A DNA stretch of 64,000 nucleotides from Botryllus schlosseri (lineage: Eukaryota): the NCBI GenBank assembly GCA_051294905.1, contig CM119372.1, forward strand, positions 6,696,001 through 6,760,000, read 5' to 3'. The stretch's first letter is position 1, and each line of letters starts with the position of its first letter. Under the pieces are notes generated by a model, which saw nothing but the letters and a program-made list of their open reading frames with translations, made no database searches and was not told the origin of the DNA. Position numbers and translations under genes: made by a program. Below, one piece after another: positions 23,905-36,567 of the stretch.

Positions 23905-25984
23905 CAGGGCTGTGGAGTCGGTAAATTTTACCACCGACTCCGGCTCCGACTCCGACTCCACACATTTTCAATATACCGACTCCGACTCCGACTCCGACTC
24001 CTGAGTCTTCGAACGTACCGACTCCGACTCCGACTCCGACTCCTGGGTCTTTAAACGTACCGACTCCGACTCCCGACTCCGACTCCGACTCCAGTAATAT
24101 TACCAATTTACTTCGAAAATTATATGCCACATTGTCGGTTGAATGACTATCCTACAACCATTAAACATATTCAAACATATTCAAACATATGAATAACGGT
24201 GGCATGCTAAATCGTTCCATTGTGGAACAGCTCGAATTATCCACTATGCAATTAACATGAAAGAAAGATTTGCTAAATATCCTTCCTTTTTCAAGTTTTT
24301 ATAACGTGGACTCTCTAATATCCTGAAATGTATGAATCATTCAAATATGGCAGATATCCAATAATGTATGATAAAATGTAGATAAAAATCCAAGTGTAGC
24401 TCTTGTGTATGAGGTAGCAACTGATAAAAGAGATTGAACTTACTAATTTTGTCATTGCCCACTATCCTGATTACAAGCACACACACTCTAACTACTAATA
24501 TACATTGGTCATAAACGGAATTTAGTTAAGTAGTCAAAGACCATAGCCTATGTCTAGTCTACATGTACTTAATCAAGTATTCAAGGATTGGGACTTGCAG
24601 TCTTTCTTAATCATTTGTTCGACCCAAACAGCTAAGCTACACTACAAATATTTTTCATTTCGTCAAGCGGGAAGCATCGTTTGGTCATATTTACATCATT
24701 TTTACAATTTTACAAAACCAGCCGATGCATTTGCTCTGTCACAGTATCATAGTATAATTCCAAGAATTGCATCAATTTCGACTGCATCGCGAAAACGCAT
24801 TTTGCGATTTTCTTCCCCTGTGCAACTGAGTTGTAATGTAGTAAGTAATGTCTAATTTTATCCATATAAGGGGTGGGCAACTTTGTCGGCCAAAGGGACA
24901 CATGAGATTTACGAACCATTGCGCGGGCAACTGGAATGTTGATAACCTTGTCCTAGTCGTCCGATAGGAGCAAACCGAATTAGGTAACATTGCAAACAAT
25001 ACTTACGCTCTAAAATTGATAATATGTCATGCAACTGTGCGGTGCGCAATCAGGCCCTTGTCGCGCGAAGCGCGAAATTTTTTTGCAATATGTCTGAATT
25101 ATATCAATAAATATGTTGCTAACATACATTGTGGGTCGCATTTGTATACCACTGGGCTCATTTGGCAAGGACAGGATTATTCGATGTTTAGACATAGCAA
25201 AATCGACGGTATCAGTGAACATGCCTCTATCATTTTGTGCAAATGTTTTGTCGACGATCTCGATGCGAGTGCACAAGCGAAGCCGTATCTCCTTATTGCG
25301 AATATAGTTAGACTCAATTCTGTGAAAAATATGTATTTATAATTTTCAGAAGAGGGCTCAAATAGGCCTACTGAATGCAAGAAATCTAGTGACAATGAAT
25401 CACGCGAAGTACCGAGAAAAATTTCAAGTCAAATAAATCTGCTATGAAACAATCTACTTTATGGTCATATACGAAGATCTGGGATAAATGTGGCTGGCCC
25501 CTTGATACGTCAATGCGTCAGAACTGTTGTTTTAGTCATCATCAAATTTCGCGGTCATGCTAATCAAATTTTGGTTGGCCTTGCAATTGTACCTGATGTC
25601 ATAAATAATTTCGAGAATTACCTCACAGGCCACACCTAACCTTCTCGTGTGCCAAATTTGGCCTGCGTGCCATAGGCTTGCCGCACGTGATCTGTATGGT
25701 TATTAATAACATTGATTGGTGGTACATGAAAATTATAAGGAAAATTCTTTGAAAGCAAATGTTTTCATGATAGAGAAGTTGGAGTCGGAGTCGAAGTCAG
25801 GGTCATTCTCACAAACTCCGACTCCGACTCCAGTCAGTATTTTCCTACCGACTCCGACTCCGACTCCGACTCCAGCTATATTATAGTTTTCACGACTCCG
25901 ACTCCGACTCCGACTCCATCAAGCGAAAATTACCCAGACTCCGACTCCGACTCCACCGACTCCGACTCCGACTCCACAGCCCTG
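23905..25984. mobile_element. Non-autonomous hAT element, family G, with (CCGACT)n subterminal arrays
   Basis: 17-bp TIRs cagggctgtggagtcgg / ccgactccacagccctg; perfect TSD ctacagta at 23897-23904 and 25985-25992. Confidence 0.92.
24868..25690 (+). mobile_element. hAT family C copy nested in family G
   Basis: Colinear with 13337-14021 (ggccaaaggg..cacat; aagcgcgaaatttttt; cacgggcca); degenerate TSD atccatat / atctgtat. Confidence 0.8.
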
Positions 25985-27934
25985 CTACAGTATGCAATAA
26001 CAACAAATGTATGCAACTGAAAAGAAGATATTTGAAACTTCATTTAATGCTGTATTTTGAAATCAGACATGTTATACGTGACTCTATTAAAGTTGCTGCA
26101 GGGTGAAGTGCCAAGTTTCATTGTGTGGTTTCTTTTGAAATATGAAAAATGCAAGTTTGCTGTTTGTTAGCCTCTATTCGACTGATAAATTTCGCTAACT
26201 TATACTGTCGAAATTTAACGAACTTTGTTCAAGCGTTTCCTGATATATTTCACATAAAGCTGTTACTAAGATAGTTTTAGGCTACTTTAACAGTTTCGTA
26301 CAACACTTTCAGCAATTTGACATACACTAAGTACAAAGTAGACCACACAAACTGAACTCTATAATACGACACCGTGTAGAAAATATACATTTCCAATTTT
26401 GAAATCACTTTGATGTTTCATTTCTCTAATTAATATGGATAAGCGTCCAATTTCTTGCATTTTGCGTTTGAAATATATCATTTATTTTGCGGACCGGCAG
26501 GAAACTTGCTGCGGACCGGTAGTTGAGAGCTACTACACTAGAGTACGGAATTAACCTCTGAATATAGGCTATATTCTCATATAGCCTACAGATTTTGGGT
26601 TATTTCGAAATGAAGTCGAGTTTTGTTGCTTTATGATTGAATGAATTGCCCGCCGGAAAAACACGACATTCATTTGTTATTAAGATACAATAGCGTTATG
26701 TGCAACACCCCAAGTGGTATTGTGTACGAACACTTCAAAACTCGCAACCTACCACGGTGTGTTCATTGGCTTATACCAAGATTTTCTGCTCCAAGGAAGG
26801 AAAATAAATATAATGAACTCGGCTTAGGCAGCATGATATTCAAGTTTGGTACACGACACACGAGAATGCTTAAAAATGAATTCGGTCATTGCTATTATTG
26901 ACCCATCACCAGTATCCTAACAATCACGTTTTGTTATCGTCGCCCTTCAAAGTACCGCGAAGAACGTCCACAAGTTTTGCCTGTCCGCATCATATCTCAT
27001 ACATAAGTCCGCGTATTCCGAAATAACACACGAACTCGGCCAGTCGCATTATTGGTACATACTATAAGTAAAATGGTTCGTGTCTAAACATTGATAAGCT
27101 TTCGGAAAACAAATATTAATTTCAGTTGAAATAAGCGTTAAGAAATCACTGCTGTTTCATGTACGTCTTGTTTACAAGGACGGCAAGCATATGTATCCTC
27201 CGGTAGTAGACTTACATTTATTGGTGTCACTTTGGGTAATCACAAAGCAGGCGTCAAGAGCGGATAAAGTAGGCTAATGACATTTGGTTCAAATCAACAA
27301 TTCTGTGTCGTTTTTTCGTGGTGGGTAAATTCGCAAATATTTGGCACTTACCGTAGCAGTTGCACAGCGCTTCCTGACATGATTCACGGGCCGGAACTCG
27401 TGTAGTTTTCGCTAGTTCAGTGTTGAACATTCCGCAGAGTAAGGAGCCAGTGTTTATTCCAATCGAATATAAATCAGCCAAGCTCTAATAATTTTTAGAC
27501 GCCATACAGGTATTAGTGAGATTGGCTTGGCGGTCAGATTGCTATACTGTCGCGTCGTTCAACGCGGTGGCTGCCTGCCGATCAAGAATATTTTATCGAG
27601 GTAAACACTGTAAAGCAATCGCCTTGTAATTTATGACCGCGTGTCACATATATTTGTGTTTTTTTATTTCTCAAATTAATTAGTCAGCAAACACGATAAT
27701 TTTATGCTTCGTTAGGGATTATGAACACATTACGCGTACGTATCATACAAGTAGGAGTCTGTGCATTGTAAGAAACGAGGAGCAAACGCCCAATAAACTT
27801 CAGGATATATGCGGTTGAAGGTTGAATATGTTCAGCTCGAGAAAGCCATTGTTGAGATATAAGATTAGACATAATTATTTTCAGTTTTCTTAACACTCGT
27901 GAGAATTATAATTACAGATTCATAAAACCCCGAT

Positions 27935-30900
27935 ATGGTACGTTTTGCATTGTTATTCATCGGAACTTTGTTCCGATATTGCTGTTGCACTATGCCCGCA
28001 GATGACCTGTCAATAAACGATCGCATAAATTCTCTAATCGAGGGAGACGACGATATGATGAAAGACCTTTCAGACCAAATGCAACCTGCGTTTTCATCGG
28101 GCGAAGATTTCACAAACGATACCTCTTCGGAGGATGTGGTCGGCATGATGGTGAAATATGACGACAGAGAGCCTATCCACACTGCGCCAATTCATACAGG
28201 CGACACTCATTTGCGGAAGAAATACCCGCAGGATTACTACGATCGATTGACTCAAAAACTGATGATGAGCTTAGACAAAGTGTTGCATGTGTATAATGCT
28301 AGCATTGTAAAGACGAATACGTCTCTATATGTAACAAAAACGTCCATTTTGGGAGAGAATGTAATTGTATTACGGATAGGGGGTGACATTGCAATCCATG
28401 TGGATGATATAGAGACTGCGTTTCCAGCCCTGACGAATTCTGACCTCTCTAAAATTGACGGTTTAATCAAAGAATACAACAGAAGTTCCGCTCATTTTAA
28501 CCTTACGAGCGACATGACAATCTGCGAAATCGAGGAAGTCGGGTCCGTACTAGCAGACGATGTTCGTCGATATGCGGCCAAAGGCATGGTTTCAGAATTC
28601 GAGGAAGGAAATCTGGGCGAGGATGAACTCCTATCCTTGCTACTAAAAAATAAAGATTACGTTCTGTCACAGTTCCCGAAAAAACTCAGTGAGATGCTGC
28701 AAGACCAACGATTACCTCCCCACATTAACGACGTTCTATTCTCCGGTGCTTATCCTCTTCGGGAATTAAAGCAAATGGTGTATCTAGACGACGTAATCGC
28801 GAAGGCCTTTCTACCGGATCGCATACGTCAGCTTTTGGAGGACAGAAATCCTCCTGCGAGACTGAAAGAGTTACAGTACTGCGGTCATAATCACTCCACC
28901 CTGATTAAACTGACATTATCGAATGAAACATTGGTGGAGAGCATGATGTCGGAAAGCATGTATTACTTCTACAACCTGTTCAGAATACCGCGGAATGTCA
29001 TGCTGAATATGGCAATGAGTGCGACGACCATAGTAGCGTTGACTTGCGTCATGACTTCATTAGGTAAGTGACTCTGAACCTGAACATTAGACTCTGATAT
29101 TTTAGATAACTAACACGGATAGATGCGCTTCACGTGATTCACGGTCGAGTGATGCTACAGTCGCAGATTTGTTGTCACTTCATAGCATGAAATGGCAACG
29201 TAATTGCTAATCCTCTCGATGACGACCCGAGCGCTTAAATTTATTACCGTTGATAATATTTGAAAGCTACAGTCGCGCTGATTATCAGAATCAGCGCGAC
29301 TGTAGCTTTCAAATAAGATCAATTTTAGTAAATTTGAGCGCTCGGGTCGTCATCTATGGGATTAGCAAGTTCGTTGCCGTTTCATGCTATTAAGCGACAG
29401 CTATTCTGCGAATGTGGCATCACTCGACCGTGAATCACGTGATGCGCATCTATCCGTAGGTAAGTTATCTATAGATAATTAGATATACCATAGCAATTTT
29501 CAGCGTAGCTGGCATGGAGAGTTCCATCTGAATACAATCGATGTTGTGGTTTACAGCGACACCTATCTCTAGCGTATTACTTTTTCGTCGTCATCCAGAA
29601 CAGAGATGTAAATAGTAGCCAGTAAAGCAATCTTACGATACTTGTGGAGATCATTCCCAAATTTGCTAAATTAAGATATATAAAAGCAACGTTTTCTTCT
29701 ATAGGACGACTGCATCTATTTTGCTGAAGCAGATTCCCGGTTTAAATCATTCCAACGAGTGAAACCTGCCTGATTTTTTCACATTCTGTGTAGGCCTACT
29801 TATTTCCAGTTAGGCAATTGCTACGCTGTAAATTGCTATGGATATACGACATAATTTTCGGTTCGTAGATTCGCTATAGCGAAAATATGAAACCTAGTAT
29901 ACCACCATGCGACAGTGAATATGAGAATGCTAAATAACTGAGATGTAGTTTGAAATTCAACGACACAGACAAAACTTACAGCAGTTAATTAGTTATAGAA
30001 CTTTAAATGATTTTCATCTAATGTATGTATTATGTGGCTCTTGTTTGTTTTGAATTATCTTTTTGTATAGTGTCTGTGGTAGACACCAATAGGGCGAAGA
30101 TAATGAAAAGATCTTAATTGATACTGGAACTTCATATAATAGACCTACATTTCATTCGATTTTTCATAAATCCTGCATACCAATGTATTTGATTATGTAT
30201 AGGTTGCACTATGACAGTTCAAGAAATCATGGTGCACGTGAGACGACCGAAAGGAGTCCTCATCGCACTGTTCTCCCAATACGGAGTCATGCCGGTATCT
30301 GCTTTTGCCTTGACACAAGCGTTCGATCTGGGAGTATATCCCGCGATCGCGGTGCTGATATGCGGCTGCTGCCCAGGAGGAAATCTGTCCAACATATTAG
30401 CATTTGCAATCAACGGAGATATGAATTTAAGGTATGGATGGATAGATGGGCAGGCAGTTAATTGCTTCCTTCTATGCGTTAGTTCATTAAGTGAAATTGT
30501 GTATCCAAAACCGTTCACACCCATTCCCGACTTTTTTTCAAGGGGGCATACCACTTCTTGAATAAGAGCCGTGAAAATTCTCTATATGCGTATGTGGCAG
30601 TTTATATGTACATCGGCACCCAAAGAACTACTTCACAGATATCTTGATTACTCCAAAATTCCAATTAGAATGACGGAGAAAGCGTAGGAGACATGCTGGA
30701 CATAATGAAAGTAAAACGGATTCACTACCGACACCATGAACAACATTTTCGAAAACATTCACATTAACTTTTCACCATAACAAGTTGATTTTCAGTAGCA
30801 ACTACGTAGTGCGTATACGCAGGGCCGTAACAGCACTTCGTCAGCCCCCAAAACTTTGGTCTTGGGCCCCCATAGGGTTATAGGCCGAACTTATGGGGGG

Positions 30901-33900
30901 CTCCGCCCCCCAGAACCCCTCTGGCGATACACTGTTTACACTTTACAGCTATCTATCATATTCGTTGGGAGTTTGTTTGTTGAATCCGCTTATGTGGCCT
31001 AAGCGCGCGAAGCGCGGAAAATTTCTGGAATTCATGATTGAATCGGTCAGTATGATCGGGAATTGCATATATATCGTTATCAATTTTTATCTTCTCTCTG
31101 CCCACGTAATCAGATTTGCCGATAGAGCTGAGTGAGGGGTGTTTGAAAAGGTAGGACCACTCAATAATAATTAAACATCTTCGGGCGTATACCCGTTGGC
31201 AGGAACGAAACAGCACCTCGTCAGGCCCCCAAAAACGTGGGTCTTGGTCTCCCATAGGGTGATAAAACGACCCCCCAACACGTTTTTTGCGTGAATTTTC
31301 GATAATTTATGATAAAATCGGTCAATCAGATCGGCGATTGCATATATATTATGCTATCAATTTATTGTCCTCTCTACTCACATAATTAGATTTACTGGTA
31401 GAGCTGAGTGAAGTGTCTTGAAAACGGGAGGGCCTGTAAATAATAATTAAACATATTCGGGTGGGCGGACCCGTTGATATGACTTCGTTACATGATGTTA
31501 TTTCGTGACTTCCAGTCTGCTATATCAAAAAATATATAGAATCGCCCAAACGTAGCCTTCTAAACTGAGAGACGCACACGATTTCAAATTGGTATTTCTT
31601 CACTGGCATAAAAATTTTTCCAGCGGGATGGTATTTGTCTTGCGATGTTCAGATTGCAAAGACATGAACATTCGGCGCCAGTCATTTAGGCGCCTATGGA
31701 CAATTAAACCTATATGTATTTTGTATATATAACGAAGTCTTCGGTCAGCATAAGGGCATAGACCTTTTCGACCAAGGTTTTCTCGCTGTCGATCGTTCTG
31801 GCACACTTCTTCGAGTCGCATGTTATATGGCCTAAAACTTGATTGTATTTCTTGGTGGGTCGTGGCGCGGTAATGCCCCAATACCCAACAATAAAGATAA
31901 ACGGCTGCTTGAAATTTTGAAAAAATTGCATAAATTTTCAAAAAATACTCTACGATTTATGCTAATTCACGAAATAATTTTGGGCCCCCTTCGAGCTCGG
32001 GCCCCTCCCAATTGGGGGGTTTGGGGTGCGGCAGTTACGTGCTGCGTATACTCTCGTTAGAACATAGGCTACGTGACTCGACTTCAAATTCCTACTGATC
32101 TCGTGGTTTGACATTTTACCATGTACAAATTTGCGTCTATGGCTGAGGATTTATATGTACTGAGTCGGTGTGACGTTTCTCAAGTCAGTTATATACATAT
32201 TATGGTTTCAAATTCGAAATGACCAAGAACTCTTAGAGAAATCACGTGTTCGTGATCATTGGGGTTTCGATTCTCCCTCTATTTGGAAAACCTGTTTTTT
32301 TATCGGCCTTCAAGTTTTAGATGAGCTTTTAGGTACATAGATTACGACTTCAAGTGCATTTATATAGGGAGAGGCCACCCAGATGTAGGTCTACATTTAA
32401 TAATCGAGTTCAAAAGCTGTATGCACAATTGCACATAATCATACATTATTACGTACGGCTTCACTCATCGTATATGGTATATCAAAATGCCGCAGCAATA
32501 GGCTATCGGAAGACCAACAGTTGTAATTCGCTATGCATTTACGGCTCCAACGCTAGTTCCGTTGGAATCAAACATCATATTATTAATGCCTCTAAAATTT
32601 ACGTTTCAGCATTCTTATGACGACATGCTCATCCGTACTCGGGCTCGCAATGATGCCTCTTCTTCTGTTTTGCTACTCTCGATTCATCATCCCAATCGAC
32701 GGAGCGGAAATCGTGCCGTTTGATAAGATTGTATTGAACATAGCCTTGACAATTTTTCCAGTGAGTATTGGCATCGCGATAAAAAGATACCGACCAAGCT
32801 GGACTACAAAAGTGATGCGGGTAAGTGGAACGGACACAATACTTTTTCTGCAGCGTAATAAACCTTTTGAGAATCATTTGAAATTATTCGACATCGATGT
32901 ATCGTTCAGTATCAATGTTCCATCGGTTCAAAACACCACAGGCCTTATATAATTTTGACGGTCAGTAAAGTTAGATATTTCAACTTTTTTTGCAGTTCGG
33001 AGGGATAATGCTGCTATTGTGTAGCATTACATTTAGCGTGATTGCCGGATTCTTGCTGGGCGACAGGTTTTTCTCGTTTTTCCCGAAGTCGGTGGTATAC
33101 TGCGCAGCTATTTTACCGGTCACGGGGTACGTTTTGGGATTTCTGCTGGCCAGATTGGTTCGGGAAAATCAAAAATGCAGGTAAAGCTAATTAGTAGTTT
33201 CAGAAGTATGCGTTACAGTCATCCCGCTGTCTATATGGTTTGTCAGTGTACTACGACACGGTCTCGAATCCCCTTCCCTGTGAACTCTGGATTCGTGTTG
33301 TTATTATGATATGAAGAGATTCACACGGATATTTAGACGTCTCTGCGATTGGAAAGCTCAAATTTAAAATTTTCCTTTAACCGAGCGTACATATTTTTCA
33401 GTCGGACAATATCCGTGGAAACAGGATGCCAAAATGTACAATTATGCGGAACAGTATTGAAGCTAGCATTCGATCCCGTACTAATCGGCGCAATGATGCT
33501 TCTTCCAATAATCTACATGCTCTTTCAGGTGATTGTGTTTGTTTTCATTACAGACGCTTCAATGAATCGACCTGGGCCCACAGTCCAGTATCCGTTGTGA
33601 GTCATACATTTGATTTTACCGCAAGGACCAGAGTCAATATTAATCAAGCAAATATTATCACCGATGCATCACCACTCTGGTACAGAAGATGTTCAGAGTG
33701 TGTGCAGATCATCGTTTGTAATCTGCCCTGTAGTAGGCTACATCCACCGGGCTTATATAACATCTTAACTTTAATACCGCAACAGGGCTTCCTTCCCATT
33801 ACATGTCTACAATCTGTTATCAATCTCCTATATCACTACGGACGACAAATGACTAAAATGCTATTCTCCTCATTGCTACTACATATCATAGCCTTATGCG

Positions 33901-36567
33901 CTCTGTTAGTTATAACCACCTGACCAGAAGCATATTCTGAGTCATAGTTTATCACAATCAGCTAATATAATTCAAAGTGAGTCGTATTTTCATGACAGGC
34001 AACTCTCCATACAACCCTAAACCTAATTTGTTTTTAATTATTCTAGTGTCATCGTCACAATGCCACAAAGAACGCGGTAGGGGAGATGTGGTACCGATGG
34101 ATCAAAAATTGCATAATGATCTCTGGCCCGTAAATCTTCAGCCGAGAATAGCAGATCTTTTGCTTTCTCGGCACTTCGATACAAGCTCTACCTATCGCAG
34201 ACATTTACATGAATATCCGCCTTTTCAAAAAATATTTATAAACGTTCAAAATTTGTTGCTCGAACGTGTCATCGGTCCACACCCGGTGGGTCCAAAGGCA
34301 CACGACCATGGGACCTATGAGACATACGCTCATAAACTCAAATTTGTTAACTTGTTTTGTTGTGTACTATAAGATAAACTACAGCAAGCCAATGAAGACT
34401 GTTTCATCGCGACCTTCAAGAAAAAAAAAAGATTATATCAACTCAAATTTTGGCATAAAATCATGTTTTGATTTATGCTTAAACTTACAAAATTAATGCC
34501 ACACACATGTTACCCGCAAATCGACATTTTGACTTTCAAATACCTAGTAATGGCGATAAAACACCGCAGGTAACTATGATTTACAGCCTATATATATGTA
34601 GGCGAGTTCCTGTTGTTAAGTGATTAGTTGGTCCATCCATCCATTTTGCTTGATTTGGCTATGGTACCATAGGTCCCCCACCCCATAAATACTGTAATTG
34701 ACTTGAAAATAGTCCGGCACTCGAGGATGGTATTGATTCAAAAAATATATGCCATTATATACCGTGACACAAGCCCTATATTTCACATCAAAAATAATGG
34801 CGGGTTTGTTAGTCTGAAAGGTGATATGGTAAAATGCAAATGTCGATCCAAATTTACTTTACACCCCCTAAAACGTAAATCATTCGTCACCGACCCCATA
34901 ACTCACGCAGGTCGAATTTTTTTGCATGTGAGGAAAGATTCTGTCAGCATGTAATTGTAGACAAATTCACGGAGTGTAATCATGGAATTATCATGGAGAA
35001 TTTTTCAAGTATTTTCGGTCCCAGTGATCCATCGGTACCACATCTCCCCTACTATGCGATTTAAACTATAACGAATTCACAGGGGGTTATCCAATATATC
35101 AATTGTCCTTAATGCCGGCATCACCCATATGCGGATGAGATTAAATAAGCATGCATGTGGATCGCACTCAATTAGTGCCCCATACAGTATATTTTACATG
35201 AAGTACAACTGATCAAGGCTAATGTAGTGTACTCCAGTACTTGTGATATTTGAGAAGTATCATTTTCATTCCGAGGAGTTACAAAGCTACATTGGTGTTA
35301 CGAGTAGAAGAGTCACAGTAACGAAGGGATACCTTATATTCGGAAAATATGTTTTGAAATCACTCTCTGTGTTACACTATATTGATTACCGCATGACTAT
35401 ACAGATGATCACGTGCGACTAATTTTATCATCACTGTGAATGCCAGAAATATGAGTTATTTATTGTTGTTTTCAGGCAGGGGAGGCGTTAATCCTGATCT
35501 CACTGTACCGATTGTATGAACGTATATTTGGAAAGAAAAAAGCATCAGACCAGGACGATGAAATAAAATTTGATGACGAAGATAGAAGTACGTTCTGCTG
35601 ATATCCAGTATTTTTTAATTGCTGCTATTGTAAAGGAGTCGATCGAGTACGATATCTTATAAATCAATGCGATGTGTCAAACCGACTAGAATATATGTCT
35701 ATTGTCCAACCGTCTGAAATGGTAATTGCTCTTCTGATGAATTAGCCGAATAGCATTTCCGCGAATTGGGATCCGATTCGCCTGAAACATAAATCTAATA
35801 GATATTTGATAAAAATTGGGATTTGAATCAAAATGTTCTTGTTCGGAGAATTGGAGTTCATGTTCAGTGCAGACTTGGACAACTAGAAAAAATTCTTAGA
35901 CTAATGTGACCGAAATGCTCGTAATCTAATTCTAGTCTATGTTGTGAAGTGCTTTTTTCTCTAATTCAAATTCCAATCCAATTAGTGAAATGTTTCTGGT
36001 TTTACTGAAAATGATACTGGAGAACTGTTTAGGGCGAAACGAGCCAACCTTGCTGCACAGATATTTACCATTCTCGTGCTTTCGAGAATGAACTCTGATT
36101 TGTTACGAACTGCGAACTCGATTCAATTTCCAAGTTTTTGCGAATTCAGTAATTCTAATTCCAATCTAATTTGGTAAAACGGTGTAGCTCTAATTCTAAT
36201 TCTATTCTAATTTGAAAAACAAATGTGTAGCTGAAAATATAATTTCAGTCTGATTTGAAAAAGCTGAAGATTTTCTAACTGGCCAACTCTGTTTCGGTGC
36301 GTCGCGAAATAGCGATTGCACCAAAGCGTATCAACACATCAGGCCAACTCGCACAGTATTATATCACACATGCTGTTTGCAGAGTTGCAACGTTCGGACT
36401 CGGACGTCAAAAAGCTGGATGACGACAGCATGTCATCAGATGATACAAATGGAGGGGACATCAACAAAAATGGCATAAGCACAAAAAAGCAAGAGGGTGA
36501 AAACTGGCCGCTGATGCCGCCCGAATTCCAGGAAGTCTTCGATAACTCCAAGGAGAACTACGTCTAG
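27935..36567 (+). CDS. SLC10 sodium/bile-acid cotransporter family protein (ASBT-like), ~725 aa, with a long N-terminal extension
   Basis: Seven phase-consistent exons: 27935-29063, 30203-30431 (GCTM..RRPKG..QYGVMP..GCCPGGNLSNILAFAINGDMNL), 32610-32820 (SILMTTCSSVLGLAMMP), 32996-33180 (LPVTGYVLGFLLAR), 33402-33528 (RTISVETGCQNVQLCGT), 35476-35587, 36383-36567; total 2178 nt. Confidence 0.92.
29105..29469. mobile_element. 365-bp foldback MITE (almost entirely palindromic), TA flanks
   Basis: Arms of ~180 bp around a 5-nt loop at ~29284-29288 (gcgctgatt-atcag-aatcagcgc); TA at 29103-29104 and 29470-29471. Confidence 0.9.
29488..29841. mobile_element. MITE with ~21-bp TIRs adjacent to the foldback
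   Basis: ccatagcaattttcagcgtagc / gctacgctgtaaattgctatgg, in a TA-rich context. Confidence 0.75.
30820..32044. mobile_element. Non-autonomous hAT-type element, family D, with an internal tandem duplication
   Basis: Ends cagggccgtaac / gttacgtgctg; TSD cgtatacg / cgtatact. Block ~30829-31199 is repeated, shortened, at ~31208-31465. Confidence 0.78.
35870..36291. mobile_element. hAT family B copy in the last SLC10 intron
   Basis: cagacttggacaactag ... ctaactggccaactctg; degenerate TSD gttcagtg / tttcggtg. Confidence 0.75.

What the first reader, a model, noticed from the sequence alone, without database searches (positions are those of the whole stretch)
27935..29063. SLC10 transporter fused to an unassigned ~355-aa secreted-type N-terminal domain encoded by one giant exon
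Seen: the 378-aa ORF ends on a donor (TTA G|gtaagt) and splices in frame to GCTM..., giving ...VMTSL-GCTM at the conserved TM1 MxxxGC motif. The extension has a signal-like start (MVRFALLFIGTLFRYCCC), an acidic segment, seven N-glycosylation sequons and an internal ~46-aa-spaced repeat (FPKKLSEMLQDQRLPPHINDVL / LPDRIRQLLEDRNPPARLKEL). Established: ASBT/NTCP are ~350 aa with short N-termini, and SLC10A3/A5 have signal peptides with shorter extensions. Inference: a ~725-aa chimeric transporter with a novel ectodomain, possibly a ligand-capture or sensor module.
Basis: partly seen in the sequence, partly recalled or inferred. Interest (0 to 1): 0.72.

Follow-up and report, generated by a model that had tools for sequence, protein, structure and literature searches.

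The report
Sea-squirt SLC10 transporter with helical ectodomain
This sea-squirt gene encodes a bile-salt/steroid-sulfate-type sodium transporter that carries, in front of its first membrane helix, a roughly 350-residue secreted-type domain whose conserved part is a three-repeat helical module with no recognisable relative. The layout is shared by other sea squirts, has no description in the papers I could search, and its function is untested.

Summary
A 376-codon first coding exon (27935-29063) ends on a canonical donor. It joins in frame to six further GT-AG exons, giving a 725-aa protein whose last ~375 residues are an NTCP-like SLC10 carrier.

RNA-type runs cover exon 1 and exons 2-5 but not the introns. 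Two transcript contigs leave the genome at the predicted donor. The exon 1-exon 2 joint itself was not among the rows shown.

A 3-kb cDNA contig from a related species encodes the same fusion in one open frame. Styela, Ciona and Clavelina have annotated "uncharacterized" proteins with the same layout.

The extension consists of:
- a signal-like start;
- a disordered acidic stretch;
- a weakly modelled alpha/beta part;
- a ~145-aa juxtamembrane domain of three ~46-aa helical repeats, with a near-invariant glycosylation sequon.

This juxtamembrane domain folds confidently (pLDDT 90). It has no Pfam match, no PDB sequence match and no structural neighbour. It is unrelated to the N-terminus of this genome's own SLC10A3/A5-like gene.

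Wherever I could check, the domain occurs only in front of SLC10 cores. Its function is inferred, not shown: an extracellular cap or vestibule on TM1 beside the substrate entrance. I class it as a new variant of a known kind, of moderate interest.

The parts
27836..27934 (+). Probable 5' UTR part of exon 1, after an acceptor ttcag| at 27835
   Evidence: X1 contig record 2 (289 nt) lies on 27839-28071 with 56 unplaced letters upstream. An in-frame TAA at 27923-27925 closes the frame before the ATG. The boundary is approximate.
27935..29063 (+). Exon 1 coding part: residues 1-376, i.e. the whole N-terminal extension plus TM1
   Evidence: ORF. Donor gtaagt at 29064. RNA coverage. 10 synonymous vs 7 non-synonymous variants, p=0.001.
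27935..27991 (+). Signal-peptide-like start (residues 1-19, MVRFALLFIGTLFRYCCCT)
   Evidence: Basic n-region plus a 10-residue hydrophobic core (KD10 2.5). The same feature is present in all nine relatives with complete N-termini. No SignalP was run.
27992..28225 (+). Acidic, predicted-disordered segment (residues 20-97; pI about 4)
   Evidence: pLDDT 34-64. D+E 17 vs K+R 4 in residues 20-80.
28229..28483 (+). Weakly modelled helix / 3-strand / helix region (residues 99-183) with four sequons
   Evidence: AF2 pLDDT 50-73. Conserved only in the closest relatives. Best PDB Z 5.0, not informative.
28562..28672 (+). Juxtamembrane domain repeat R0 (residues 210-246), degenerate
   Evidence: hhalign R0 vs R1: probability 72%, E 3e-5.
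28673..28810 (+). Juxtamembrane domain repeat R1 (residues 247-292, FPKKLSEMLQ...)
   Evidence: hhalign R1 vs R2: probability 96%, E 1e-9. pLDDT >90.
28811..28948 (+). Juxtamembrane domain repeat R2 (residues 293-338, LPDRIRQLLE...), with the conserved sequon N319
   Evidence: The sequon is kept in 13 of 14 aligned sequences. P, G and N are near-invariant.
28949..28996 (+). Conserved aromatic pre-TM1 helix (residues 339-354, SESMYYFYNLFRIPRN)
   Evidence: Conserved even in the most distant long-form relatives. Helix 340-350 in the model.
28997..29063 (+). TM1 of the SLC10 core (residues 355-376), ending in SLG|C
   Evidence: Hydropathy. Aligns to NTCP TM1 through P0002.
30203..30431 (+). Exon 2 (SBF core; CCPGGNLSN and GDMNLS motifs)
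   Evidence: Pfam SBF E 3e-18. RNA depth. Gene model.
32610..32820 (+). Exon 3
   Evidence: Gene model. RNA depth.
32996..33180 (+). Exon 4
   Evidence: The joint 33180->33402 is seen in X1, X2 and X20.
33402..33528 (+). Exon 5 (ETGCQNVQLC motif)
   Evidence: Joint. 11 X20 reads leave at 33529 into the exon 6 sequence.
35476..35587 (+). Exon 6 (last TM and start of the acidic tail)
   Evidence: The loose-end consensus maps here. Gene model.
36383..36567 (+). Exon 7 (acidic C-terminal tail ending ...GENWPLMPPEFQEVFDNSKENYV, then stop)
   Evidence: Matches the C-termini of P0002 and other long-form relatives.

Best explanation
This is one real gene of an ascidian. It encodes a 725-aa member of the NTCP/ASBT/SOAT/SLC10A4 branch of the SLC10 sodium-coupled organic-anion carriers.

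Shown:
- The carrier core (residues ~355-650) keeps the family's sodium-site and substrate-site motifs.
- TM1 is encoded in the same exon and frame as a 354-residue extension.
- The extension starts with a signal-like sequence. It ends in a conserved, confidently folded, all-helical juxtamembrane domain of three ~46-residue repeats that carries a near-invariant N-glycosylation sequon.
- This domain has no detectable relative outside long-form SLC10 proteins.

Inferred:
- The signal sequence delivers the extension to the ER lumen, so it ends up outside the cell (or inside a vesicle). That matches the N-out topology of 9-TM SLC10 carriers.
- The helical domain is tethered directly to TM1 of the panel domain. 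It would therefore sit at the outer mouth of the cleft between panel and core, where substrate enters.
- My preferred mechanism is that it acts as an extracellular cap or vestibule. It would pre-bind substrate or control access to the site, or dock a partner there. Candidate substrates are sulfated sterols such as the ascidian sperm attractant SAAF.
- The acidic, fast-evolving distal half would be a glycosylated spacer.

I put the architecture at about 0.85 and the cap/vestibule role at about 0.3. The confidence figure given is a blend of the two.
For: Gene model: seven exons, all GT-AG, 725 aa. SBF Pfam hit on exon 2. The core is 87% identical to P0002, 78% to the Styela protein and 44-45% to vertebrate NTCP and SLC10A4. 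P0002 aligns to solved NTCP at E 2e-86, with QxG(V/I)MP, PGGNLSN, MTTCS and ETGCxNxQLC conserved; the window protein has the same motifs.

Transcription: exon 1 and exons 2-5 are covered and the introns are not. Two contigs leave the genome at the donor.

Same fusion elsewhere: an uninterrupted 771-aa ORF on a 3013-nt cDNA contig, plus Styela LOC120342401, Ciona LOC100186727 and Clavelina proteins. ORF fragments of the domain lie 1.7-3 kb upstream of SBF exons on two further contigs.

Selection: 10 of 17 listed variants are synonymous, p 0.001.

Domain: repeats. AF2 pLDDT 90, pTM 0.79. No Pfam match. No PDB sequence match. No fold neighbour: best AFDB E 2.1, best PDB Z 2.9, best atlas TM 0.39.

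Outside location: a signal-like start in all complete relatives and a sequon kept in 13 of 14. The nine-TM panel/core layout with TM1 in the panel, and the cavity between panel and core, are described in PMC8165160; the N-out orientation rests on established knowledge of NTCP, not on that paper. SAAF is a sulfated steroid (PMC8835908).
Against: No signal-peptide or topology predictor was run. There is no experimental evidence for glycosylation, surface exposure or transport.

The ectodomain has almost no cysteines, which is unusual for extracellular domains.

Nothing here shows that the helical domain touches the core or binds any ligand. The single docking attempt gave no verdict.

The AF2 model rests on only 18 sequences.

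For human SLC10A4, removing or swapping its (unrelated) long N-terminus changed neither sorting nor transport (PMC4472396). Long SLC10 N-termini therefore need not gate anything.
Confidence: 0.6

Rival explanations
1. The extension is a structural or biogenesis appendage with no direct part in transport. It would be a glycosylated stalk that helps folding, ER exit, surface stability, oligomerisation or sorting of the carrier. The carrier itself would work like a plain NTCP/SOAT.
For: The distal half is acidic, disordered and diverges fast: 32% identity to P0002 against 87% in the core. In Ciona and Clavelina the distal part is replaced by other low-complexity sequence. In SLC10A4, deleting or swapping the N-terminus had no effect on transport or sorting.
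Against: The membrane-proximal 145-190 residues are conserved across divergent ascidians and fold confidently. That argues for a specific structure-dependent role rather than a spacer. The domain is found only with SLC10 cores.
Confidence: 0.25
2. The hydrophobic start is not a cleaved signal peptide but an extra membrane span or anchor. The extension would then lie in the cytoplasm, giving a 10-TM N-in topology like the bacterial ASBT homologues, and would act as a cytoplasmic regulatory domain.
For: The ectodomain has only two non-conserved cysteines after the start. All-helical, acidic repeat domains are common in the cytosol. No signal-peptide predictor was run.
Against: The h-region is only about 10 residues in the window protein, which is short for a span. 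A sequon next to TM1 is kept in 13 of 14 sequences and sequon density is 1.1-3.6 per 100 residues across relatives. The core aligns from TM1 onward with 9-TM NTCP, not with the 10-TM bacterial form.
Confidence: 0.08
3. Exon 1 and the SLC10 exons are not normally one mRNA in this species. There would be a separate upstream gene, or a mostly used alternative short first exon, and the fusion would be an annotation or reading artefact.
For: The 29063->30203 joint row was not displayed. Exon 1 contig depth is lower than the summed depth of exon 2 alleles.
Against: TM1 itself lies in exon 1 and is needed to complete the core. Contigs from two studies leave the genome exactly at the donor, with about 96 extra letters that fit exon 2. 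The true RNA run has no coverage in intron 1. The fusion is one ORF in a relative's cDNA contig. The depth gradient fits 3' bias.
Confidence: 0.04

Closest known systems
NTCP (SLC10A1) and the ASBT/SOAT group
   Same: The carrier core is shared: Pfam SBF, about 45% identity, conserved sodium-site and substrate-site motifs, and an acidic or short cytoplasmic tail after the last TM.
   Different: NTCP, ASBT and SOAT have about 20-30 residues before TM1. This protein has 354, with a signal-like start and a folded helical-repeat domain. The intron after SLG|C in TM1 is seen in the ascidian genes only.
SLC10A4 (orphan vesicular carrier)
   Same: Equal core identity (about 45%). A longer lumenal N-terminus and an acidic C-terminal tail that matters for sorting (PMC4472396).
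   Different: The SLC10A4 N-terminus is about 100 residues and showed no similarity to this extension (BLAST against P0030-P0049). It has no signal-peptide-plus-repeat-domain layout.
SLC10A3 / SLC10A5 (orphans with signal peptide and ~130-180-aa N-terminus)
   Same: Both have a signal-like start and an extracellular or lumenal extension in front of an SBF core.
   Different: This genome has its own single-exon gene of that type (L007:1072-2481; PGGGGG and GGDVTLAIS motifs; the A3/A5 assignment is from memory). Its N-terminus is unrelated to this one: BLASTP E 0.14 or worse, hhalign probability 0.2%. A full-library phmmer search with exon 1 found no protein outside the long-form group, all unnamed.
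Uncharacterized long-form SLC10 proteins of other ascidians (Styela clava LOC120342401, Ciona intestinalis LOC100186727, Clavelina lepadiformis)
   Same: Same architecture, juxtamembrane repeats, pre-TM1 motif, core and C-terminal WPL...EN[YFV]V ending.
   Different: They are 819-995 aa, with different and longer distal regions. Ciona and Clavelina carry an extra R0-like unit and polybasic or mucin-like stretches, and their domain is split by an intron. None is described in the papers I could search.

Membership tests
SLC10 / SBF (PF01758) sodium-coupled carriers | Significant match to the SBF profile | tested here: met
   Exon 2 alone scores E 2.9e-18, 66.7 bits against a cutoff of 24.3. Orthologs carry PF01758.
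SLC10 / SBF (PF01758) sodium-coupled carriers | Conserved sodium-site and crossover motifs (Q in TM2, PGGNLSN, MTTCS, ETGCQNxQLC) | tested here: met
   All are present in the spliced protein. In ortholog P0002 they align with solved NTCP. The residue-to-site assignment rests on established NTCP/ASBT structures.
SLC10 / SBF (PF01758) sodium-coupled carriers | Na+-dependent transport of bile salts or steroid sulfates | not testable with these tools
   This needs uptake assays.
NTCP/ASBT/SOAT/SLC10A4 branch | Closest vertebrate relatives are SLC10A1/A4-type rather than A3/A5/A7 | tested here: met
   Core identity is 44-45% to NTCP and SLC10A4 proteins. The own-genome A3/A5-like gene matches the Ciona long-form query (P0021:470-700) at only 26% identity. 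One-to-one orthology was not tested; earlier work found none for Ciona (PMC3540847).
SLC10A3/A5-type N-terminal extension | Sequence or profile similarity of the extension to the A3/A5-type N-terminus | tested here: not met
   BLASTP E 0.14 or worse and hhalign probability 0.2% against the N-terminus of L007. The phmmer hits in the 1.84-billion-protein library were only long-form relatives. Human A3/A5 sequences themselves were not available here.
Known helical repeat or extracellular domain families (Pfam, PDB, AFDB) | A profile or fold match to the juxtamembrane domain | tested here: not met
   Pfam: none. PDB profile: best E 0.52. Foldseek on AFDB clusters: best E 2.1, TM 0.30. VIA-wide on PDB: best Z 2.9. 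Atlas: best TM 0.39.
Secreted / type-I-like N-out ectodomain | Cleavable signal peptide and lumenal exposure (glycosylation) | tested here: inconclusive
   A signal-like start is present in all complete relatives, and the N319 sequon is conserved in 13 of 14. No predictor or experiment was available.

The most novel reading that the evidence does not exclude
The three-repeat helical juxtamembrane domain is a new extracellular fold that works as a built-in substrate-capture or gating module for an NTCP-type carrier. In ascidians it would handle sulfated sterols such as the sperm attractant SAAF. That would make it the first SLC10 carrier with an integral extracellular ligand-handling domain, and a window on what this carrier branch did before bile salts existed.
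Probability: 0.15. Interest if true: 0.7.

Novelty: new variant of a known kind. Interest (0 to 1): 0.45.

Why it matters
SLC10 carriers are drug targets, and NTCP is the hepatitis B virus receptor. Four of the seven human members are still orphans, and what the family did before vertebrate bile salts appeared is unknown.

Ascidians turn out to have a conserved long form of the NTCP-like carrier. A confidently folded helical-repeat domain of unknown fold sits exactly at the outer end of TM1, next to the substrate and preS1 entrance. If it binds or gates substrate, that would be a new way of regulating this transporter class. It would also give a lead to the native substrates in invertebrate chordates, where sulfated sterols are known signals.

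If it is only a stalk, the finding is still useful: an undescribed lineage-specific domain family worth a Pfam entry.

Tried and rejected
- **Protein-language-model look-alike search:** neither exon 1 nor the domain alone gave a usable hit.
- **Fold searches with the whole exon 1 model:** only noise. I repeated them with the domain alone.
- **Word-index homolog searches:** queries with the N-terminal regions of P0002 and P0005 returned only Styela, or nothing new.
- **Own-genome searches:** searches with the domain (single sequence, profile, and the Ciona version) found only this locus. The tool scores few candidates, so this is a lower bound.
- **Complex prediction, juxtamembrane domain against carrier core (both from P0002):** no verdict, score 0.21, below the mark. 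This is neither support nor evidence against.
- **Cluster look-up:** no organism names for the unnamed relatives, so reach beyond ascidians could not be settled.
- **MAFFT alignments A2 and A3:** these placed repeat 1 of short fragments onto repeat 2. I dropped those half-fragments for the domain model.
- **Intron-5 read-through ending (...QVIVFVFITDASMNRPGPTVQYPL*):** rejected as the main form, because 11 RNA reads leave at 33529 for exon 6.
- **Furin-type processing of the extension:** no R-x-[KR]-R site in the window protein (by eye).
Full report
**What is there.** The window comes from a sea squirt. On the + strand, an ORF runs from the ATG at 27935 to a stop at 29071. An in-frame TAA lies 12 nt upstream of the ATG. 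At 29063 the frame meets TTAG|gtaagt. At 30202/30203 an acceptor tatag|GTTGCA opens an exon that Pfam recognises as the SBF (SLC10) family, E 2.9e-18.

Joining the exons in phase gives ...VMTSL-G-CTMTVQEIM.... I followed the gene downstream. Seven exons, all with GT-AG introns, give a 2178-nt CDS and a 725-aa protein: 27935-29063, 30203-30431, 32610-32820, 32996-33180, 33402-33528, 35476-35587 and 36383-36567. From the local stop frequency, the chance of 376 open codons is about 2e-9.

**Is it transcribed as one message?** I laid four public runs on 27600-33599.
- Two contig runs flagged 'RNA?' (X1, X2; the type is the tool's guess, and they come from different studies) and one true RNA-seq run (X20) cover exon 1 and exons 2-5. 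They have zero depth in the unique parts of the introns.
- A fourth run (X12) covers the introns too, so it is DNA.
- The exon 4-5 joint is seen in X1, X2 and X20.
- Eleven X20 reads leave exon 5 at 33529 into a sequence that maps to exon 6 at 35479.

Two contigs bear on it indirectly. One (600 nt, X1) follows exon 1 to 29060 and one (345 nt, X2) follows it to 29062. They then carry 98 and 96 more letters, although the intron was available to align to. About 95 nt of exon 2 reaches 30297. That is exactly where a heterozygous SNP at 30298 starts a bubble, and the allelic contigs begin at 30268, i.e. 30 nt before it. I read this as strong indirect support, not as a read junction.

Exon 1 depth rises 5' to 3' and is comparable with the per-allele depth of exon 2, which fits one transcript with 3' bias. 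Of the 17 listed variants in exon 1, 10 are synonymous against 22% expected (p 0.001), so the frame is under purifying selection.

**Relatives.** I ran a full phmmer pass of exon 1 against 1.84 billion representative proteins. It found only 16 hits.
- One is a 771-aa protein (P0002). It is encoded as a single uninterrupted ORF on a 3013-nt Logan contig, so it is a cDNA from a related species with the same fusion.
- Searches with P0002 added Styela clava LOC120342401 (819 aa), Ciona intestinalis LOC100186727 (995 aa), two Clavelina lepadiformis proteins (943 and 869 aa) and unnamed long forms of 561-782 aa.
- Two genomic ORF calls (P0001, P0003) end in ...VMTSLGK. They read into an intron just as the window ORF does, so the single large exon and the SLG|C intron are shared.
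- Short ORF fragments carry either half of the conserved region. Two of these lie 1.7-3 kb upstream of SBF exons on separate contigs of an ENA assembly.

Wherever I could check, the domain stands in front of an SLC10 core and nowhere else.

In this genome only this locus carries it, though that is a lower bound.

Core identity is 87% to P0002, 78% to Styela, 62-63% to Ciona and Clavelina, and 44-45% to vertebrate NTCP and SLC10A4. The extension, by contrast, is only 32% identical to P0002.

**Anatomy of the extension.**

| Residues | Feature | Evidence |
|---|---|---|
| 1-19 | Basic residue plus a 10-residue hydrophobic core; every relative with a complete N-terminus has the same | |
| 20-97 | Acidic (pI about 4), predicted disordered | |
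| 99-183 | Helix / three strands / helix at modest confidence; conserved only among close relatives | |
| ~205-350 | Conserved part, here called the juxtamembrane domain | |

The juxtamembrane domain consists of three tandem units of about 46 residues: R0 210-246, R1 247-292 and R2 293-338. R1 and R2 match at hhalign probability 96%, E 1e-9. R0 and R1 match at 72%.

Each unit reads roughly [LF]P-x5-[LM]-x-[ED]-x3-P-x2-[IL]-x3-[FLY]-x-G-x1-2-N-x-[ST]. The P, G and N of R2 are near-invariant. The N is a sequon (N319) kept in 13 of 14 sequences. A conserved aromatic helix (SESMYYFYNLF) follows and runs straight into TM1.

After the start there are only two cysteines, and neither is conserved.

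**Is the domain known?**
- Pfam finds nothing in the window protein or in nine relatives' N-termini.
- A profile of the domain finds nothing among PDB sequences; the best E is 0.52.
- AlphaFold2 on the domain alone, with 18 aligned sequences, gives pLDDT 90.2 and pTM 0.79. The model has about twelve short helices.
- Fold searches with that model give best E 2.1 and TM 0.30 in the AFDB clusters, best Z 2.9 over 48,161 PDB representatives, and best TM 0.39 in the ESM atlas.

By the tool's own calibration, models without a clear relative typically still reach Z 7-8, and helical ones more. These values are therefore unusually low. I take this as "no recognisable relative", not as proof of a new fold, because the model is a prediction from a shallow alignment.

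**Is it the SLC10A3/A5-type N-terminus?** The same genome has a separate single-exon SLC10 gene (L007:1072-2481, 469 aa). It has a signal-like start, a ~160-residue beta-looking extension and PGGGGG/GGDVTLAIS motifs. From memory, I recognise these as the A3/A5 type. Its N-terminus is unrelated to the window's: BLASTP E 0.14 or worse, hhalign probability 0.2%. The N-termini of the vertebrate NTCP and SLC10A4 proteins I had fetched gave no hit either.

**How it probably works.**

*Shown.* The core has the family's sodium-site and substrate-site motifs.

*Established knowledge.* NTCP-type carriers have nine TMs, with TM1, 5 and 6 forming a panel domain and the substrate cavity lying between panel and core (PMC8165160). 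Their N-terminus is glycosylated and outside.

*Inferred.* With a signal-like start and a conserved sequon next to TM1, the extension is extracellular or lumenal. The helical domain, tethered to TM1 through an aromatic interfacial helix, then sits at the outer mouth of the substrate cleft. I therefore favour a cap or vestibule that pre-binds substrate, controls access, or docks a partner, with the distal acidic half as a glycosylated spacer.

Candidate substrates are sulfated sterols. Ascidian eggs release SAAF, a sulfated steroid (PMC8835908), and the vertebrate relative SOAT carries steroid sulfates.

None of this functional part is tested. The one docking attempt gave no verdict. For the unrelated long N-terminus of SLC10A4, deletion or transfer changed neither transport nor sorting (PMC4472396), which keeps the plain "stalk or biogenesis" reading alive.

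**Novelty.** The architecture is present in public databases only as uncharacterized proteins. A 2012 study counted 16 putative SLC10 sequences in Ciona without discussing this form (PMC3540847). Searches for the locus names and for the family in tunicates found no description.

I class it as a new variant of a known kind: a known transporter family with an undescribed, lineage-conserved ectodomain. Interest is moderate. It is a clean, real and conserved feature with an unexplained domain, but its function is open and it answers no long-standing question by itself.

Noticed in passing
window 29115-29457 (intron 1): A near-perfect palindrome: two 169-nt arms, 88% complementary, 5 nt apart. Contig depth spikes here in all contig runs, so it looks like a multi-copy foldback or MITE-like element.
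   Followed up: partly
window ~30800-32100 (intron 2): A very high-copy repeat, with summed contig depth in the thousands to hundreds of thousands. It shows many internal rearranged joints and some reads in the true RNA run. It is probably an abundant transposable element family.
   Followed up: no
window 36497-36567 (end of exon 7) and the C-termini of P0002, P0017, P0020, P0021, P0023, P0005: The acidic cytoplasmic tail ends in a conserved motif, [NTVA]WPL...EN[YFLV]V (EKMV in P0005), shared by the long-form SLC10 proteins. It may be a sorting or PDZ-type signal. In SLC10A4 the C-terminus is what directs vesicular sorting (PMC4472396).
   Followed up: partly
L007:1072-2481 (G000:C7, about 704767-706176): A separate single-exon 469-aa SLC10 gene of the A3/A5 type (assignment from memory). 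It has a signal-like start and a ~160-residue N-terminus that looks beta-rich by eye and is unrelated to the one studied here.
   Followed up: partly
window 33529-33600: If intron 5 were retained, the frame would run on for 24 codons (VIVFVFITDASMNRPGPTVQYPL*). That would give a truncated carrier without the last helix and tail. RNA reads favour splicing to exon 6.
   Followed up: partly
window ~25790-25980: Interrupted (GACTCC)n hexamer repeat blocks about 2 kb upstream of the gene.
   Followed up: no
P0034, P0043 (unnamed 604-609-aa proteins): A further group of long-form SLC10 proteins has a different, cysteine-rich ~250-residue N-terminal extension. Long ectodomains have therefore been added to this carrier branch more than once.
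   Followed up: no
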